Shown: positions 1 through 8,713, numbered from the stretch's first letter. The stretch is 8,713 nt of DNA from Octopus sinensis (GCF_006345805.1 NW_021828368.1:1-8713); one strand, 5' to 3'. Numbers and translations: made by a program. The notes: generated by a model from the letters alone, not told the origin.

Positions 1-257
1 TCAGTGTCATTTGCCGAACCGCTAAGTTACGGGAATGTAACCAGCATCGGTTGTCAAGCGTTGTTGGGGGACAAACACAGGCACACAAACATATACACAC
101 ACATACATATATACATATATACGACGGGCTTCTTTCAGTTTCTGTCTACTAAATCCACTCACAAGGTTTTTGTTCTTCCCGAGTCTATAGTAGAAAACCC
201 CAAGGTACCACGCAGTGGGATTGAACCTCGGAACAATGTGGTTCGTAAGCAAGCTAC
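1..257 (-). mobile_element. tRNA-derived SINE, family A, head-truncated; probably continues beyond the window start
   Basis: Aligns by eye with the copy at 6436-6874 (shared TTGTCAAGCG..GGGGGACAAAC, CA/TA tract, ACGACGGGCTTCTT..CAGTTT..GTCTAC, TGAACC..GGAAC..TGTGGTT.GTAAGCAAGCTA). Minus-strand B box GGTTCAATCC at 218-227. A box lost, because homology stops at ~257. Confidence 0.85.
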
Positions 258-263
258 GTACTG

Positions 264-442
264 TTTTTTTTATATATAAATTAAGTACCAGTTATGCGCT
301 GGGGTCGACATAATCGACTTGATCCCTTTGCTGTCCTTGTTTGTCGCCTCTATGTTTAGCCCCTTGTGGACAATAAAGAAATAAGAAATATAGTCACAAA
401 GAGGTCAATATCCGCAGAAGCAAAAATCACAAATTAAAGGGG
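264..442 (+). repeat. Left arm of ~180-bp inverted duplication (partner 1639-1800)
   Basis: The reverse complement of 1639-1800 matches this segment: T-run, SINE B 3' half and ~50 bp of non-SINE flank (TATAGTCACA..TCCGCAGAA.CAAAAATCACAAATTAAAGGGG). Confidence 0.85.
277..388 (+). mobile_element. tRNA-derived SINE family B, 3' half only
   Basis: TAAATTAAGTACCAGTT..CTGGGGTCGA..TAATCGACTT..TTTAGCCCCTTGTGG..AATAAAGAAATA matches the 3' halves of the copies at 623-849 and 5953-6190. Confidence 0.85.
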
Positions 443-1161: not shown

Positions 1162-1433
1162 CCGTATTTTAACGTGAATAAGGAAACCATTTTGTCAAAA
1201 ATTAGGTTTAAAAAATATGAGAGTTTCTTATACATAGATCGCGTTATAATCCCTTGCAAAACCTTTTTTCCAAATTTTAAGCCCAAAAAAATTAGGGGGT
1301 TCCTTAAACAAGTTAAAATACAGTAGATTTACCCCTAAAATATATCAAACTGTTATAATCCCTTGCAAAACCTTTTTTTCTAAATTTTAAACCCAAAAAA
1401 ATTAGGGGGTTCTTTAAACACGTTAAAATACGG
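1162..1433. mobile_element. Non-autonomous Tc1/mariner-superfamily MITE (Tc2/pogo-like CCGTATTT termini), TA-flanked, right end duplicated
   Basis: TACCGTATTTTAACGTG (1160-1176) is the exact reverse complement of CACGTTAAAATACGGTA (1419-1435), and the match extends imperfectly to ~27 bp. A second, diverged right TIR (CAAGTTAAAATACAG+TA) ends at 1323. The Tc2/pogo assignment is from recalled terminal motifs. Confidence 0.75.
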
Positions 1434-1532
1434 TAGATTTACCCCTAAAATATATCAAACTGTTATAATCCCTTGCAAAACCATTTTTCCAAATTTTAAG
1501 CCCCAAAAATTACCCCTAAAATATATCAAACT
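1243..1532. repeat. Tandem repeat, 109-110-bp unit, two full copies plus an internally deleted third
   Basis: Units start GTTATAATCCCTTGCAAAACC at 1243, 1352 and 1462. The third unit lacks the TIR-containing middle. Confidence 0.95.
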
Positions 1533-1638: not shown

Positions 1639-1800
1639 CCCCTTTAATTTGTGATTTTTGTTTCTGCGGATGTGACTATATTTCTTATTTCTTTATTGCC
1701 CACAAGGAACTAAACATAGAGGGGACAAACAAGAACAGCAAAGGGATTAAGTCGATTACGTCGACCCCAGTGCGTAACTGGTACTTAATTTATAAAAAAA
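1639..1800 (-). repeat. Right arm of inverted duplication (partner 264-442)
   Basis: Reverse complement matches 264-442. I count 9 substitutions over ~120 bp, plus a 12-bp indel in the flank. Confidence 0.85.
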
Positions 1801-1954
1801 GATTGTGGTCAGATGATACTTATTTTATTGACCTCGAAATGATGAAAGGGAAAGTCTACCTCGGTGGCATTTGAACTGAGAACGTAAAGATCCGGAAGGA
1901 ATGCCGCTAAGCATTTTGTCCGGTGCGGTATAGGTTCTGCCAGCAGGCCGCCTT
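1681..1954 (-). mobile_element. SINE family B, full-length but interrupted by a 24-bp insert (1793-1816)
   Basis: The head on the minus strand (CTGGCAGAACC A-box-like, CAGTTCAAATGCC B-box-like) is at ~1830-1954. The tail is at 1681-1792. Confidence 0.85.
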
Positions 1955-2154
1955 TGACGTAATGAAAAAGAGAAATGTTAGCAAACAGAGAGAGGAGGGG
2001 GAGGGCAGATTGTAAATAAATCAAATTGTGACGTCCTTTGATCTTGACCTATCAATGGCGGTTGGTGAAGATTCTTTATAAACGAGATTCATTAAATACA
2101 TTCAAAGCAATCTTCCTAAGCTTTATTTTGAAAATCATTTCCTCTGAATGTGAC

Positions 2155-2253
2155 CTCTCTTTCTCTCTCTCTCACCCTCTCTTTCCCTCTATCTCTTTCT
2201 CTCCATCTATTTCTCTCTTTGTTTCTCTCCGCCCACCTCTCTTCCTTTCTCTC
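2155..2253. repeat. CT-rich low-complexity/(CT)n tract
   Basis: Directly visible. Confidence 0.85.
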
Positions 2254-2369
2254 GTTTTCTGGTAGGAAAGAGAAAACACTTGTTTTAACTATCATCACTA
2301 TTTTTTACGACTGTTTTTCTTTTATATTTTTATTCAGTATATAGTTTTTTCCCTTCTATAAATTACTAT

Positions 2370-2460
2370 ACACACGCACATACACGCACACACACACACA
2401 CACACACACATACACGCCACGCGCGCGCGCAAGCACACACACACACAGTCACGCACACAT
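2370..2460. repeat. (CA)n microsatellite with a (CG)n interruption
   Basis: Directly visible. Confidence 0.9.
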
Positions 2461-2542
2461 ATGAGAACGATAATATTTTTTTAAATATCATCGTTGATGG
2501 CTGCGAGTATAAGCCGTTGTACAAATTAATAAAATATATACA

Positions 2543-2544
<2 letters not shown>

Positions 2545-2573
<29 letters not shown>
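2545..2573. repeat. (TA)n microsatellite
   Basis: Directly visible. Confidence 0.95.
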
Positions 2574-2575
<2 letters not shown>

Positions 2576-2672
2576 AGGGTACTACATAAGCACCTGCATC
2601 ACTAAAAATAGAAGTCAAAATACTTCTAAGTCACGGAAGAATCACAAAATTAAAAATACACAAATATATAAA

Positions 2673-3277
2673 CAGTGCGTTGGGTAAATTTTCACCATTT
2701 TGTATTTTTTATTTCACGCATGCGCATTCATTGTTTGGTTTTGATTTTGTCGATCATACAGTATGGTAGGGTCAGTTTGGCACCGTCTATGAGAAGAACA
2801 GCACCATGACGCAATTCGCTCAGCTAGAAATTTGAAAACGATATGCTGTACTGATTGGCATTTTCACCGGAAGCGTCAATGTGAACAGATAACGAACACT
2901 CAGAACAACCGTTGGCTTGCTGTGTCCCAAAACATGTACCGAGAGTGATAAAAATCAAACATCCAGTCAACATCATGGTGTTTGGAGTGACCACTAGTGA
3001 CGGCGACGTGATGCCTCCATTTATCTTCCCACATGGCCTCACGCTCAACACGGAGGCCTACATCAAGTGCCTGGAGGATGTAATGCTGCCCTGGGTCAAC
3101 AGGGTGGCTGCTGGAAGACTATGTCTGGCAACAGGACTCTGCACCATGCCACACAAGCAGGAGAACCCAGTCATGGCTTTCAGACAATTTCTGCGACCAC
3201 ATCTCACCCCTAACATCTGGGCACCTAACTTCCCAGACCGCAACCTCCTTGATTATTATGTGTGAGGCACAGTTTAG
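2673..3277 (+). mobile_element. Tc1/mariner DNA transposon remnant, DD37D (maT-like), internally deleted and 3'-truncated
   Basis: Contains the transposase pseudogene below. The left boundary is approximate (CAGTG.. start). No matching right TIR was found in the window. Confidence 0.8.
2806..3265 (+). pseudogene. DD37D transposase pseudogene
   Basis: Joined frames give NTQNNRWLAVS / HVPRVIKIKHPVNIMVFGVTTSDGDVMPPFIFPHGLTLNTEAYIKCLEDVMLPWVNRVAAGR / YVWQQDSAPCHTSRRTQSWLSDNFCDHI / TPNIWAPNFPDRNLLDYYV*. Catalytic D2 is GAC 3135-3137 and D3 is GAT 3251-3253, with 37 residues between once the 2-nt insertion at 3204-3205 is discounted. There is a putative start ATG at 2806 and a premature TGA at 2833. 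The first catalytic D and the HTH region are absent. Confidence 0.88.
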
Positions 3278-3281
3278 GACT

Positions 3282-3393
3282 CAGTTTCATACACCTACAG
3301 GTTTCACGAGCAATGCCATTTTTACCTGTAGAGTTACCAGTTTCATACACCTACAGGTTTCACGAGCAATGCCATTTTTACCTGTAGAGTTAC
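3282..3393. repeat. Perfect 56-bp tandem duplication (3282-3337, 3338-3393)
   Basis: Two identical copies of CAGTTTCATACACCTACAGGTTTCACGAGCAATGCCATTTTTACCTGTAGAGTTAC. Confidence 0.97.
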
Positions 3394-4394
3394 CAAACTG
3401 CCAAATATTATTTATTTAATTGTAGCTTGAACTAACTACATGAGATTTATATTTATATGCAAATTGGACCGTTTCAGGTCAAATTATCTTTGTCGAACTG
3501 TTGCAGATATATCTCTGGTAATTAAAGAGTCAGTATCCAAAGCAGTCTCAAAGTATTTCTTCCATCTTTGTAAAATCTCATTTTTTCATTCAGCAGTTTT
3601 ATAAAATTTGTATTGGAAACGGGGCGCGAACCACAGATTCATGATCCATAAACGCTTTTCATAGAATGTTTTAATTCCTTCCTATCTATATATGTTGGAT
3701 CCTATTTCTTTTCTGCTTCCATCAAATATCTCTCGTATCTTTAAAGACTTGTGTATCGATCTCCTTAGCTCAAGGTAAGTCTTTTCTCTCGCTTGGAATT
3801 TTTCTCAGATATCCACTTCTCGTGTGCTGTCTGCAAACTTTCTAAGAGAAAATTAATTTCAAGGTTTCTCTTCTCAAATGAATGCCAATGCTTAAGATGG
3901 AGAAATCAAGCATTTCAAAGGAAGCAAAGTATGTTGCTTATTTGAGGTACCTCTCAAATTCTTCAACATTTATTATAAATATTCACAATTCAGACTTACA
4001 ACTAATTTATCTCGGAGCTCTGGAATCGTTAACTTCAGCCTTGAGAGACTTGACAATTATACATCTAGAAGCTTTGATATCCTAATATCGTTGTTTTGTT
4101 AAATTCAGAAAGATACTTTACCTCATAACACAGAGCGCTTCGACTGTCAACAAACGGTATGAGATTAACGAACGGAAAGAACGTAATTTTGTTTAATTTA
4201 TTGATGTTTGTATAATCAACGTGTTGCATAACCATTATTTATAATCACCAGTTTGTACATTTACGAGATTAGGCAATCAACAGATTGTATAAATCCGATT
4301 ACATAATCGTTCTGGTGATTATGCAGTTAATTAAATGCTGGTCCTTTGAGTTAGGATACATCCAAGTTATTTCATCGTTATTTAGTTGCTAGAA
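3282..4394 (-). mobile_element. Decayed RTE-clade LINE ORF: endonuclease C-terminus, linker and start of RT domain 0
   Basis: Minus-strand peptides in colinear order: ITWMYPNSKDQHLINCIITR (4370-4311; cf. RTE TWMHPRSKHWHLIDY), NVEEFERYLK*ATYFASFEML, LEINFLLESLQTAHEKWISEKNSKREK (3863-3783), KSVYGS, EILQRWKKYFETAL (3579-3538; cf. ILxRWxEHF) and NSTGKNGIARE (3391-3359; cf. KAPGxDGIPxE). Many stops and frameshifts. Family motifs are recalled, not searched. Confidence 0.8.
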
Positions 4395-4789
4395 GTGGAG
4401 GCGCAATGTCCCAGTGGTTAGGGCAGCGGACTCGCGGTCATAGGATCGCGGTTTCGATTCCCAGACCGGGCGTTGTGAGTGTTTATTGAGCGAAAACACC
4501 TAAAAGCTCCACGAGGCTCCGGCAGGGGATGGTGGTGATCCCTGCTGTACTCTTTCACCACAACTTTCTCTCTCACTCTTACTTCCTGTTTCTGTTGTAC
4601 CTGTATTTCAAAGGGCCGGCCTTGTCACTCTCTTGTGTCACGCTGAATATCCCCGAGAACTACGTTAAGGGTACACTTGTCTGTGGAGTGCTCAGCCACT
4701 TACACGTTAATTTCACGAGCAGGCTGTTCCGTTGATTCGGATCAACCGGAACCCTCGTCGTCGTAACCGACGGAGTGCTTCCAAAAGAA
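4395..4789 (+). mobile_element. Full-length tRNA-derived SINE family C (tRNA-Arg-like head) with 11-bp TSD
   Basis: A-box-like TGTCCCAGTGG (4407-4417) and B-box-like GGTTTCGATTCC (4450-4461). Exact AGTTGCTAGAA at 4384-4394 and 4790-4800. It may correspond to the tRNA-Arg-related 'OR' SINEs described from octopus (recall, unverified). Confidence 0.9.
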
Positions 4790-4980: not shown

Positions 4981-5115
4981 GTGTCTGAGGAGAGTCATTT
5001 CTTTTTTTGTGCCTTATGATTTAACACACTCACCGGTAAGATTTCCACTTATTCCTTATTTTTATTTTCCTAAAATTTTCGTTGCTTCTTGCAACCTTTT
5101 CAATAGTTTTGACTC
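4981..5115 (+). mobile_element. Possible Penelope-like terminal-repeat fragment with partial hammerhead motif
   Basis: CTGAGGA (4985-4991) is followed by GAGTCA (4992-4997), which is complementary to TGACTC (5110-5115). No GAAA follows. It sits where RTE homology ends. Confidence 0.3.
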
Positions 5116-5952: not shown

Positions 5953-6333
5953 AAGGGCGACGAGCTGGCAGAAACATTAGTACGCCGGGAAAAAATGCTT
6001 AGCGGTATTTCGTCTGCCGCTACGTTGTGAGTTCAAATTCCGCCGATGTCGACTTTGCCTTTCATCCTTTCGGGGTCAATTAAATAAGTACCAGTTACGC
6101 ACTGGGGTCGATATAATCGACTTAATCCGTTTGTCTGTCCTTGTTTCTTCTCTCTGTGTTTAGCCCCTTGTGAGTAGTAAAGAAATAGGTATTTCGTTTG
6201 CTGTTACGTTCTGAGTTCAAATTCCACCGAGGTCGACTTTGCCTTTCATTATTTCGGGGGTCGATTAAATAAGTACCAGTTACGCACTGGGGCCGATGTA
6301 ACCGACTTAATCCCTTTGTCTGTCCTTGTTTGT
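5953..6333 (+). mobile_element. SINE family B head-to-tail dimer (full copy 5953-6190 plus headless partial copy 6188-6333)
   Basis: A-box-like TGGCAGAAACA (5966-5976) and B box GAGTTCAAATTCC (6029-6041). The second unit restarts at GGTATTTCGT 6188-6197, which also occurs at 6004-6013 (period 184 bp). Confidence 0.9.
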
Positions 6334-6474
6334 TTTATCCACCTTATAGTGGATAAGCATTATTTGTGAGTTAACAAAGCTACCAACAGTTTCATGCGAT
6401 CTATATGTGCGTCTGTTTGTGAATATATCCATATATTGTCAAGCGATGGTGGGGGGACAAACGCCGACACAAAC

Positions 6475-6522
<48 letters not shown>

Positions 6523-6533
6523 TATATATATAT

Positions 6534-6670
6534 GACATAAGTCCTTGTTTTTCCTGATGAGAAGGCGGCATAATGCACCCCTTATTCCTTCGAAATTAGG
6601 AATATGCAGCCTTCGAAACATATGTCGAGAATAAGGAATTTTGTTAATTCGTCGTTCAACTCCGTTCTCA

Positions 6671-6680
<10 letters not shown>
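6534..6680 (+). mobile_element. ~147-bp hammerhead-bearing cassette (Penelope-like pLTR or retrozyme-like fragment)
   Basis: Non-SINE sequence absent from the 1-257 copy, embedded between two (TA)n runs. It holds the hammerhead motif followed by AATAAG and a T-rich end. Confidence 0.6.
6542..6637 (+). ncRNA. Type I hammerhead ribozyme motif (minimal palindromic stem III, enlarged stem II)
   Basis: Stem I 6542-6553/6627-6637 (11 bp, 2 G-U, 1 bulge). Core CUGAUGA 6554-6560. Stem II GAAGGC 6561-6566/GCCUUC 6609-6614. GAAA 6615-6618. Stem III within the palindrome ACAUAUGU 6618-6625. Cleavage triplet GUC 6624-6626. Confidence 0.82.
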
Positions 6681-6711
<31 letters not shown>

Positions 6712-7089
6712 GACGGGCTTCTTCAGTTTCCGTCTACCAAAATCGACTCACAAGGCTTTGGTCTGCCCGAGGCTACAGTAGAAGACAGCTGTCAAAGGCG
6801 CCACACAGTGGGACTGAACCCGGAACTATGTGGTTGGTAAGCAAGCTATTTACCACACAGCCACTCCTGCGCCTATATTAACTACATCATGTTTATGTCT
6901 ATGAATATGTTGATATTTAATTTTAGGCAGGACTATACATACAGACCGGACGTTGACTAATTTTCAGTAGAATAAATTATTTTATATTTGGCAGTGACTT
7001 CGAATTTTGCGTTTTCTTGTCTTCCTCTGAAGAAATCAAATGAGCTGAAACTGCGAAGTCTCTGTCAGATTTTCCTTTGTAAATGTTAC

Positions 7090-8010: not shown

Positions 8011-8713
8011 CACATACAGAAACATAGGCACACATACACACACATACAGAAACATAGACACACATACACACACATACAGAAACATAGACACACATACACA
8101 CACATACAGAAACATAGACACACATACACACACATACAGAAACATAGACACACATACACACACATACAGAAACATAGACACACATACACACACATACAGA
8201 AACATAGAACACAAGACACCACAACAGAAACATAGACACACATAAACACACATACAGAAAACGTAGACACACATACACACACATACAGAAACATAGACAC
8301 ACATACACACACATACAGAAACATAGACACACATACACAAACATAGACACACATACACACACATACAGAAACATAGACACATACACACACATACAGAAAC
8401 ATAGACACACATACACACACATACAGAAACATAGAAACACATACACACACATACAGAAACATAGAGCACATATCACACACAACAGAAACATAGACACACA
8501 TACACACACATACAGAAAAATAGACACACATACACACACATACAGAAACATAGACACACATACACACACATACAGAAATAGACACACATACACAAACATA
8601 GACACACATACACACACATACAGAAACATAGACAACTACACACACATACCCCCCAGAAACATAGACACACATACACACACATACAGAAACATAGACACAC
8701 ATACACACACATA
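8011..8713. repeat. 30-bp minisatellite (CACATACAGAAACATAGACACACATACACA), ~23 units, running off the window end
   Basis: Near-exact 30-bp periodicity over 8011-8206, with variant units further on. Confidence 0.97.

What the first reader, a model, noticed from the sequence alone, without database searches (positions are those of the whole stretch)
6542..6637. Complete type I hammerhead ribozyme with palindromic minimal stem III and a large structured stem II
Seen: every core element is in the right order: stem I (11 bp), CUGAUGA, stem II (GAAGGC/GCCUUC), GAAA, A-U and C-G pairs of stem III, and GUC. Predicted cleavage is after C6626. Stem III lies in the 8-nt palindrome ACAUAUGU. Stem II extends via GCAUA/UAUGC (6568-6572/6603-6607) and a UUCCU/AGGAA hairpin, 54 nt in all. 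Established: minimal hammerheads with palindromic stem III are typical of Penelope-like elements and cleave as dimers (work from the de la Pena and Breaker labs). Inference: the monomer is probably weak, but two transcripts could pair through the palindrome. The long stem II is unusual for this class.
Basis: partly seen in the sequence, partly recalled or inferred. Interest (0 to 1): 0.85.

Follow-up and report, generated by a model that had tools for sequence, protein, structure and literature searches.

The report
Hammerhead ribozyme in Penelope-like retroelement tail
The window does hold a complete hammerhead self-cleaving RNA motif, but it is the 143-147-base leftover tail of a Penelope-like retrotransposon that has scattered more than 7,000 such motifs through this large animal genome, and only its big, conserved helix II is out of the ordinary.

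Summary
At 6542-6637(+) there is a type I hammerhead with a full catalytic core, a 54-nt helix II, a 2-bp helix III inside the palindrome ACAUAUGU, and a GUC cleavage site.

It is not a stand-alone gene. It is the 5'-truncated 3' tail (about 6534-6676) of a retrotransposon inserted into a (TA)n microsatellite.
- Longer copies in the same 2.72-Gb genome run upstream into one ORF. [quoted passage not shown]
- The ORF carries the motifs published for the Hydra clade of Penelope-like elements (PLEs).
- Full units have the hammerhead on both sides of the ORF.

At least 7,219 intact hammerheads of this type are present, against 0 for the reversed-pattern control. Between subfamilies the core is invariant and helix II shows compensatory changes. 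The helix III 8-mer stays self-complementary, and cofolding predicts the classic double hammerhead.

A PLE hammerhead is a known kind of thing. Two points are new in detail: helix II is expanded about four-fold relative to a distant relative's compact hammerhead, and Rfam's curated thresholds miss the motif. The window copy is a dead, slightly damaged passenger. Cleavage itself was not tested.

The parts
6534..6676 (+). 5'-truncated 3' tail of a Penelope-like (Hydra-clade-like) retrotransposon. Both ends are uncertain by a few bases because they abut TA repeats.
   Evidence: A 147-nt query (6534-6680) finds 51 scored copies at 93-98% identity among 1932 first-look candidates. Other copies continue upstream of GACATAAGT, and 22 of 30 copies end at ...CATTTAT followed by (TA)n.
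6542..6553 (+). Hammerhead stem I, 5' strand.
   Evidence: The proximal 5 bp are conserved with covariation.
6554..6560 (+). Core C3-A9 (CUGAUGA).
   Evidence: Invariant across subfamilies except the free position N7.
6561..6614 (+). Helix II domain of 54 nt. It has 6 bp, a 1x1 mismatch (G6567/A6608), 5 bp, an internal loop and a distal hairpin.
   Evidence: The proximal rod is 93% paired, and 5-6 of its 11 pairs show changes on both sides.
6615..6617 (+). Core G12 A13 A14.
   Evidence: Invariant.
6618..6625 (+). Helix III plus loop 3, which together form the self-complementary 8-mer ACAUAUGU (A15.1-U16.1, C15.2-G16.2, loop AUAU).
6626..6626 (+). C17. The predicted scissile bond lies between C6626 and G6627.
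   Evidence: Follows from hammerhead numbering applied. Other subfamilies have GUA here.
6627..6637 (+). Hammerhead stem I, 3' strand.
6475..6533 (.). (AT)n microsatellite, upstream half of the insertion target.
6677..6710 (.). (TA)n microsatellite, downstream half of the insertion target.
6440..6853 (.). Host interspersed repeat that carries the microsatellite. Its paralogue at window 30-270 has the microsatellite without the hammerhead tail.
   Evidence: alignment A3.

Best explanation
The motif is the hammerhead ribozyme carried in the terminal repeat (pLTR/3' tail) of a Penelope-like retrotransposon.

[quoted passage not shown] The ORF has the motif set published for the Hydra clade.

The window copy arose by target-primed reverse transcription into a (TA)n microsatellite. 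That reverse transcription stopped early, so only the last roughly 143 nt of the element were copied, and these happen to include the whole ribozyme.

In transcripts of full elements the ribozyme sits both upstream and downstream of the ORF. Helix III is too short to hold as a monomer. Two ribozymes, either on one tandem transcript or on two RNAs, are therefore inferred to pair through the self-complementary 8-mer ACNNNNGU and swap stem I strands. This builds a double hammerhead that cuts after GUC/GUA, leaving 2',3'-cyclic phosphate and 5'-OH ends and trimming read-through RNA to unit length.

The 54-nt helix II is a lineage-specific expansion that selection has kept. Its role is unknown.

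Shown here: the motif, its family, its host element, the covariation and the copy number. Inferred: cleavage, dimer use and biological role. The window copy itself is a passenger with no expected function.
For: Motif and significance.

Family and truncation:
- 51 scored copies at 93-98% identity.
- Other copies extend 5' by 89 to more than 1200 nt.
- 3' ends: 22 of 30 at (TA)n, 7 of 30 running into the next unit.
- Head-to-head inverted partial copies are frequent.
- The paralogous host repeat lacks the insert.

Host element:
- Upstream ORF with FDIxxFYPSI, a YRDD box and IYQC...YIGET...R..NH...CxxC.SE.
- One unit has a hammerhead at 1384, an 899-codon open frame and a hammerhead at 5030, spacing 3646 nt.
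- More than 10,066 first-look RT candidates in the genome.
- The AlphaFold model (pLDDT 76, pTM 0.74) has telomerase RTs as its best PDB matches, E = 1.3e-9.
- Motifs RW(K/L), DKT, no Cys pair between GIY and YIG, and CxxC..E..N..CxH match the Hydra-clade description in PMC8557442.

Conservation:
- A covariance model finds this hammerhead in each of the 12 loci fetched around divergent RT subfamilies, and in 2 of the 5 shorter RT loci also searched.
- 85.5% of cells are paired against 37-50% in slid controls.
- Helix II is 93% paired, with 5-6 of 11 pairs changed on both sides.
- The core is invariant.

Copy number: 7,219 exact matches to a core-plus-spacing pattern, against 0 for the reversed control.

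Dimer:
- Loop 3 is AUAU, AUGU or ACGU in whole subfamilies. The non-complementary ACAU occurs 41 times, scattered, against 1,410 for AUGU.
- The cofold MFE forms the intermolecular 8-bp helix III plus trans stem I in 5 of 5 subfamilies, 5.8-12.7 kcal/mol below two monomers.

Literature on PLE hammerheads, tandem/inverted insertions, tails and (TA)n bias: PMC4209133, PMC8557442.
Against: - No cleavage or expression data exist for this family.
- Metazoan PLE hammerheads cleave poorly in vitro (PMC4209133).
- In the one PLE reconstituted in vitro, hammerhead mutants did not affect insertion, and no RNA-seq reads ended at the cut site (PMC11167929).
- Rfam scores the motif below its gathering threshold.
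- Pfam barely sees the RT or the GIY-YIG domain, so the PLE and Hydra assignments rest on motifs, a predicted fold and architecture, not on a phylogeny.
- The Hydra-type CxCX5C linker is absent from these ORFs.
- The loop-3 argument rests on only two substitution steps among master lineages, and CpG decay contributes to both AUGU and ACAU.
- The window copy has no partner ribozyme nearby.
- The window copy prefers a slipped stem I register.
Confidence: 0.85

Rival explanations
1. The conserved hammerhead-shaped RNA is kept mainly as a structured 3'-end element that the element's RT/EN recognises for target-primed reverse transcription. On this view self-cleavage is weak or irrelevant in vivo.
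For: - The distal part of helix II (UUAUUC...GAAU) is nearly invariant in sequence rather than covarying.
- The motif lies within about 50 nt of the element's 3' end, so even very short truncated copies retain it.
- In PAc, hammerhead mutants did not change insertion.
- Metazoan PLE hammerheads have low activity in vitro.
Against: All catalytic-core positions, the G10.1-C11.1 pair, the NUH site and the self-complementary helix III are kept in every subfamily, while the helices change by compensation. This is the pattern expected for a working ribozyme. A pure protein-binding site would not need the exact hammerhead core. The two roles are not exclusive.
Confidence: 0.15
2. The copy belongs to a non-autonomous 'retrozyme' (a short tandem repeat released as circular RNA by flanking hammerheads) and not to an autonomous PLE.
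For: - Some loci carry two complete hammerheads in direct orientation only 287 nt apart (L027), or alternating inverted pairs with a period of about 500 nt (L002).
- Animal retrozymes have been proposed to derive from PLE terminal repeats (preprint 10.64898/2026.07.22.740005).
Against: - The window has one copy only, with no direct repeat.
- The sequence is collinear with the tail of ORF-bearing elements, from the truncation point to the (TA)n junction.
- A graded series of 5' truncation points is seen.
Confidence: 0.05
3. The motif is a chance match in AT-rich, repeat-rich DNA.
For: The Rfam score is below the gathering threshold. The surrounding sequence is low-complexity.
Against: - 2 descriptor hits in 1000 shuffled windows.
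- 7,219 genomic matches against 0 for the reversed control.
- Covariation across subfamilies.
Confidence: 0.01

Closest known systems
Hammerheads of Penelope-like elements (Cervera & de la Pena 2014, PMC4209133; from my own memory also Lunse, Weinberg & Breaker 2017 on small PLE hammerheads that cleave as dimers)
   Same: - Type I topology.
- Located in the terminal repeats on both sides of an RT/GIY-YIG ORF.
- Thousands of mostly solitary, truncated copies, and pairs on opposite strands 100-700 bp apart.
- G10.1-C11.1 pair.
- Helix III minimal, with palindromic 15.2-16.2 and loop 3, implying dimers.
- Consensus families with compensatory changes.
   Different: - Published metazoan PLE hammerheads have helix II of about 6-8 bp. 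Here helix II is a 54-55 nt domain: a 12-position rod, an internal loop and a hairpin.
- There is no unpaired nucleotide between A9 and G10.1.
- A real 2-bp helix III with a 4-nt loop is present, unlike the 'min-HHR', which has none.
Hydra clade of C-terminal EN+ PLEs (Craig et al. 2021, PMC8557442)
   Same: - RW(K) and DKT motifs.
- No CCHH cysteines inside GIY-YIG.
- CxxC and CxH around the catalytic E and N.
- Insertion into (TA)n.
- Hammerhead present.
- Aquatic invertebrate hosts, including molluscs.
- Distant protein relatives (29-40% identity) carry the CxCX5C linker.
   Different: - The ORFs in this genome have lost the CxCX5C linker cysteines and gained two disordered low-complexity stretches of about 70 and 125 residues. 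The one before the nuclease is N/S-rich.
- Units are about 3.65 kb, against the published figure of under 3 kb.
- The hammerhead is not 'canonical' in size.
- Clade membership was not tested by phylogeny.
Rfam RF00163 Hammerhead_1
   Same: The whole 45-position model aligns, with core and helices in order.
   Different: The score is 22.7 bits against a gathering score of 34. The motif is not reported in a gathering-threshold scan, nor in an E<=1 scan of 29.5 kb.
Double hammerheads of satellite and viroid-like RNAs (newt satellite 2, Schistosoma Sm-alpha, ASBVd; Forster et al. 1988 as cited in PMC4209133)
   Same: A short, self-complementary helix III. The active fold is predicted only when two copies pair.
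   Different: Those sit in short tandem satellite or rolling-circle units. This one sits in the tail of an autonomous retrotransposon, and the window copy is solitary.
Compact hammerhead of distantly related elements (ENA contigs L053-L056)
   Same: Same place in the element: about 157 nt after the stop codon and about 60 nt before a ...TTTAT 3' end that abuts (TA)n. Same orientation.
   Different: Helix II there is a 4-bp stem with a 5-nt loop (about 15 nt), and helix III is 3 bp with a 3-nt loop.

Membership tests
Hammerhead ribozyme, type I | Core C3 U4 G5 A6 N7 G8 A9 / G12 A13 A14 / A15.1-U16.1 / H17, in order, between three helices, with helix I open. | tested here: met
   The core is invariant in 24 and in 20 distinct family sequences.
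Hammerhead ribozyme, type I | Helices supported by compensatory change. | tested here: met
   Helix II: 93% paired, with 5-6 of 11 pairs changed on both sides. Proximal stem I pair 12-95 is UA/UG/CG. Slid controls are 27-50% paired. Distal stem I is not conserved between subfamilies.
Hammerhead ribozyme, type I | Site-specific self-cleavage. | not testable with these tools
   Needs in vitro transcription or RNA-end mapping.
Rfam RF00163 Hammerhead_1 | Bit score at or above the curated gathering score (34). | tested here: not met
   22.7 bits. No hit at gathering threshold. The L049 copies are not reported at E<=1.
PLE-type hammerhead (PMC4209133) | Lies in the terminal repeats flanking an RT plus GIY-YIG ORF. 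| tested here: met
   L049: hammerheads at 1384 and 5030 around the 1718-4417 frame. L051 is similar.
PLE-type hammerhead (PMC4209133) | Palindromic 15.2-16.2 and loop 3. | tested here: met
   ACAUAUGU in the window; ACACGUGU and ACAUGUGU in other subfamilies.
PLE-type hammerhead (PMC4209133) | Unpaired nucleotide between A9 and 10.1 (frequent, but not universal). | tested here: not met
   G6561 follows A6560 directly and pairs with C6614. The distant relative has a U there.
Penelope-like element | RT whose nearest relatives are telomerase RTs. | tested here: met
   Foldseek of the AlphaFold model: ranks 1-3 and 5-10 are TERTs, best E = 1.3e-9. This is fold evidence, not a phylogeny.
Penelope-like element | GIY-YIG endonuclease fused to the RT. 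| tested here: inconclusive
   The motifs IYQC...YIGET, R, H, E and N are present and aligned with relatives. The model shows beta-beta-alpha-alpha-beta-alpha at residues 780-870. Pfam GIY-YIG gives only E = 0.008-0.03, below its cut-off. One relative reaches 6.3e-5.
Penelope-like element | 5' truncation, partial tandems (pLTR), adjacent inverted copies and microsatellite targets. | tested here: met
Hydra clade of PLEs (PMC8557442) | DKT instead of DKG; an RWK motif; no CCHH inside GIY-YIG; CxxC/CxH around E and N. | tested here: met
   SDKT, IRWL (relatives have RWK/RWR), a single Cys between GIY and YIG, and CNLC..SE..N..CPH.
Hydra clade of PLEs (PMC8557442) | CxCX5C linker before the nuclease. 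| tested here: not met
   Relatives have CNCRx3-4CPLxGxC. The ORFs of this genome have low-complexity sequence there instead.
Hydra clade of PLEs (PMC8557442) | Placement inside the clade in an RT/EN tree with reference PLEs. | not tested
Metazoan non-LTR retrozyme | Head-to-tail array of short (about 170-400 nt) units, each with a hammerhead. | tested here: not met
   The window has a single copy. Only occasional loci such as L027 look like this.

The most novel reading that the evidence does not exclude
The 54-55 nt helix II is not just tolerated bulk. It would be a lineage-specific functional module grafted onto a PLE hammerhead.

Its proximal rod covaries, while its distal hairpin (UUAUUC...GAAU) is almost invariant in sequence across all subfamilies. 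This hints at a protein-binding site (the element's own RT/EN, or a host factor) or an RNA-contact site that couples ribozyme folding to reverse-transcription priming or to dimer formation.

If so, this would be a protein- or partner-gated hammerhead class with more than 7,000 genomic copies that curated models do not detect.
Probability: 0.2. Interest if true: 0.55.

Novelty: new member of a known kind. Interest (0 to 1): 0.3.

Why it matters
This result turns an apparently striking solitary ribozyme into an explained object: a dead-on-arrival retrotransposon tail.

Three things may still be useful to specialists.
1. It documents a very abundant PLE lineage, fitting the Hydra clade by its motifs, in what is probably a cephalopod genome. 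That is at least 7,219 intact hammerheads and more than 10,000 RT candidates. I found no ribozyme mentioned in a recent octopus repeat annotation (PMC13282606).
2. Rfam thresholds and short-helix descriptors miss hammerheads with a large helix II, so hammerhead censuses in such genomes are undercounts.
3. The family offers a natural comparison between a compact and an expanded helix II in homologous elements. It also offers a helix III that changes along an AU to GU to GC path, which only makes sense in a dimer. Both are directly testable in vitro.

Tried and rejected
- Rfam at gathering threshold on the window gave nothing. Rfam at E<=1 on six loci missed even the clear L049 hammerheads.
- The top 'evalue' hit, a Pestivirus 3'UTR model, is an artefact of the (TA)n run.
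- Pfam on ORF pieces and on the full ORF gave almost nothing. Sequence and profile searches of the PDB gave nothing relevant. The RT call therefore rests on motifs and on a fold search.
- Model R1 and my first descriptor found nothing in distant relatives' contigs. Reading the sequence by eye then showed a compact hammerhead.
- The supplements of PMC8557442, which list Hydra hammerheads, are not held.
- ARAGORN found no tRNA-like heads in the window.
- I tested whether the invariant distal arm CCUUAUUC is kept because it pairs with the stem I 3' strand. The duplex is strong in the window copy (-10.4 kcal/mol). Across subfamilies it is only modestly better than shuffled arms (mean -5.6 against -3.7; 2-47% of shuffles do as well). 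I do not claim it.
- I considered and rejected a chance motif, a retrozyme unit and a host-exapted ribozyme. Nothing bears on host use.

Full report
**1. The observation**

- Stem I strands: 6542-6553 and 6627-6637.
- CUGAUGA: 6554-6560.
- Helix II: 6561-6614. It comprises GAAGGC/GCCUUC, a G/A mismatch, GCAUA/UAUGC, and a distal hairpin UUCCU/AGGAA.
- GAAA: 6615-6618.
- Helix III: A6618-U6625 and C6619-G6624, closing the loop AUAU.
- GUC: ends at C6626.

The open helix is helix I, so the topology is type I.

Significance:
- The MFE fold reproduces stems I and II, with a z-score of -3.28.
- Rfam at gathering thresholds reports nothing in the window.
- In a permissive scan of 6480-6700, Hammerhead_1 aligns end to end at 22.7 bits (gathering score 34), E = 0.0021. 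It is penalised for a 50-nt insertion in helix II.
- A structural descriptor of my own hits the window once. It hits 1000 dinucleotide-preserving shuffles of the window twice in total.

**2. It is a repeat, and this copy is a truncated tail**

The window lies in a 2.72-Gb assembly of 13,516 contigs.
- A 147-nt query (6534-6680) has 1932 first-look candidates. The 51 scored copies are 93-98% identical.
- Oriented alignment of 30 copies shows that most continue upstream of the window's first base (GACATAAGT...). They extend through ...CATCTTGATGCT and further, with many different 5' end points.
- At the 3' side, 22 of 30 copies end at ...CATTCTTTCATTTAT followed directly by (TA)n. Seven run straight into the start of another unit, and one is in TA-rich sequence.
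- Partial copies in head-to-head inverted orientation sit next to many copies.
- In the window the insert lies between an (AT)30 run (6475-6533) and a (TA)n run (about 6677-6710). Both sit inside an interspersed repeat whose paralogue at 30-270 has the microsatellite without the insert.

**3. The host element**

Longer copies lead upstream into an ORF.
- A 645-codon open frame and an 899-codon frame show the RT boxes FDIxxFYPSI and YRDD. After a long low-complexity stretch comes a C-terminal IYQC...YIGET...R..NH...CxxC.SE...N...CxH domain.
- In locus L049 the hammerhead occurs at 1384 and again at 5030 in the same orientation, on either side of the ORF (1718-4417). The unit length is 3646 nt. 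L051 is alike.
- The RT piece has more than 10,066 first-look candidates in the genome. Subfamilies are at 72-88% amino-acid identity, and open frames reach about 920 codons.
- Pfam is nearly blind to this protein, and so are sequence searches of the PDB.
- An AlphaFold model built on 27 homologues (mean pLDDT 76, pTM 0.74) has telomerase reverse transcriptases as its best structural matches (E = 1.3e-9). DRT2, group II intron and retron RTs follow.
- A telomerase-like RT fused to a GIY-YIG nuclease, together with pLTR-like repeats, 5' truncation, tandem/inverted insertions and microsatellite targets, is the published definition of Penelope-like elements (PMC8557442).
- Within PLEs the motif set fits the Hydra clade as that paper describes it. 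The set is SDKT in place of DKG, IRW(L) for RWK, no cysteine pair between GIY and YIG, CxxC and CxH around the catalytic E and N, and (TA)n targets.
- Distant relatives (29-40% identity) also have the CxCX5C linker. The ORFs of this genome have lost it.
- I could not run a phylogeny with reference PLEs, so the clade call is provisional.

**4. Conservation of the ribozyme**

I fetched 12 loci around divergent RT subfamilies. A strict descriptor was followed by a covariance model built on nine sequences.
- The model finds a hammerhead with the same 54-55 nt helix II in each of these 12 loci. It also finds one in 2 of the 5 shorter RT loci searched with them.
- On 24 distinct sequences, 85.5% of cells are paired, against 37-50% when partners are slid.
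- Helix II is 93.4% paired, and 5 of its 11 pairs are changed on both sides: GC/AU at 27-75, 28-74 and 31-71, and AU/UA at 34-68 and 35-67.
- The proximal stem I pair 12-95 runs UA/UG/CG. RNAalifold recovers helix II on its own.
- A second set of 20 distinct types, taken from genome-wide pattern hits and aligned without the model, gives 93.2% pairing and 6 of 11 pairs changed on both sides for the rod.
- The catalytic positions are invariant. Variation falls only on N7 (U/A/G), on position 17 (C/A), and as G-U at 10.1-11.1 in some lineages.
- The distal hairpin of helix II is mostly invariant in sequence (UUAUUC...GAAU), so it is neither supported nor contradicted by covariation. Most subfamilies fold it as UCCU.AUUCC-UUC-GGAAU.AGGA.
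- The exact pattern CTGANGAGAA-N44-50-YTTYGAAACAYRTGTMGA occurs 7,219 times in the genome. The same pattern read backwards occurs 0 times.

**5. Helix III and the dimer**

- In the energy model, forming the 2-bp helix III costs +0.6 to +1.4 kcal/mol.
- The 8-mer A-C-NNNN-G-U is ACAUAUGU, ACAUGUGU or ACACGUGU in established subfamilies. All three are self-complementary if G-U is allowed.
- The changes follow an AU to GU to GC path between loop positions 2 and 3. These two positions can pair only between two molecules.
- Genome-wide, the non-complementary ACAU variant occurs 41 times, scattered over several subfamilies. AUGU occurs 1,410 times, and AUAU plus ACGU occur 5,768 times.
- This evidence is suggestive and not strong. 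It rests on two substitution steps, and CpG decay feeds both AUGU and ACAU.
- RNAcofold of two copies gives, in 5 of 5 subfamilies, an MFE with the 8-bp intermolecular helix III and stem I formed in trans. This is the double-hammerhead topology, at 5.8-12.7 kcal/mol below two monomers.
- This matches what is published for metazoan type I and PLE hammerheads (PMC4209133).

**6. The window copy itself**

- Against a 30-copy majority sequence of the 143-nt tail, it differs by two single-base deletions. One lies in each strand of distal stem I.
- It also differs by one A-to-G change and a small rearrangement near the 3' end.
- The core, helix II and helix III are identical to the majority sequence.
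- No second ribozyme lies in the window.
- This copy is best seen as a non-functional passenger.

**7. How unusual is helix II?**

- Contigs encoding distant relatives of the ORF (L053-L056) carry a hammerhead at the homologous place. It lies about 157 nt after the stop codon and about 60 nt before a ...TTTAT end that abuts (TA)n.
- Their helix II is a 4-bp stem with a 5-nt loop.
- Published metazoan PLE hammerheads have helix II of 6-8 bp.
It explains why Rfam misses the motif, and why descriptors with short spacers would be expected to miss it too.

**8. What is known and what is new**

- Hammerheads in PLE terminal repeats, their dimer design, PLE insertion into (TA)n and the Hydra clade are all published (PMC4209133, PMC8557442).
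- The biological need for cleavage is still unclear (PMC11167929).
- A recent repeat annotation of Octopus vulgaris lists PLEs but mentions no ribozyme.
- The source organism is not given. The assembly size, the roughly 30 large contigs and a weak hit to an Octopus bimaculoides protein suggest an octopus. That is my inference and is unverified.
- I rate the finding as a new member of a known kind, with a noteworthy helix II variant.

**9. Limits**

- No cleavage, expression or RNA-end data were available.
- The RT and EN assignments rest on motifs and a predicted fold.
- The covariance-model alignment leans towards its own structure, although the MAFFT-only set agrees.
- Copy counts are lower bounds.

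Noticed in passing
L049:1718-4417 (ORF residues 492-562 and 633-758); alignment A4: The PLE ORFs of this genome have lost the CxCX5C cysteine linker that their distant relatives carry before the nuclease. They have gained two disordered low-complexity stretches of about 70 and 125 residues, the one before the nuclease being N/S-rich. The elements still insert into (TA)n, which sits awkwardly with the published idea that this linker directs (TA)n targeting.
   Followed up: partly
L027:1256-1647 (- strand); L002:1452-2226: L027 has two complete hammerheads in direct orientation only 287 nt apart, a retrozyme-like mini-tandem that could release a small RNA. L002 has four hammerheads alternating -,+,-,+ with a period of about 500 nt.
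   Followed up: partly
window 6580-6587 and 6629-6636: The distal helix II arm CCUUAUUC is an 8/8 complement of GAAUAAGG in the stem I 3' strand of this copy (duplex -10.4 kcal/mol, against -11.0 for stem I itself). This could be a misfold or a switch. Across subfamilies the effect is weak.
   Followed up: yes
alignment A5, window-type positions 29-34 and 39-43 (window 6582-6587, 6592-6596): UUAUUC and its partner GAAU in distal helix II are almost invariant in 20 divergent subfamily types, while the neighbouring rod covaries. The reason for this sequence constraint is unexplained.
   Followed up: partly
window 269-398, 622-811, 1671-1800, 5993-6339: Several copies, in both orientations, of a SINE-like interspersed repeat (90-95% alike). 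It includes a tandem pair at 6004-6339. ARAGORN finds no tRNA-like head.
   Followed up: no
window 30-270 and 6420-6860: A second interspersed repeat family carries an internal (CA/TA)n microsatellite. One copy served as the target of the PLE tail insertion.
   Followed up: partly
window 1243-1509; 3282-3395; 8011-8713: Three tandem arrays: a 110-nt unit x2.4 (93% matches), a perfect 56-nt duplication, and a 30-nt-period array of about 24 copies (CACATACAGAAACATAGACACACATACACA) that runs off the window's end.
   Followed up: no
L053:2797-2850 and the same motif in L054-L056: The compact hammerhead of the distant relatives has U/U flanking a CGCC/GGCG helix II, where G10.1-C11.1 is usual. Helix III is 3 bp (ACU/AGU) with a 3-nt loop. 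The source organism of these ENA contigs is unknown.
   Followed up: partly
window 6488-6581: A sub-threshold Rfam match to a Pestivirus 3'UTR model (32 bits against a gathering score of 90) is caused by the (AT)n run. It is an artefact, not viral sequence.
   Followed up: yes
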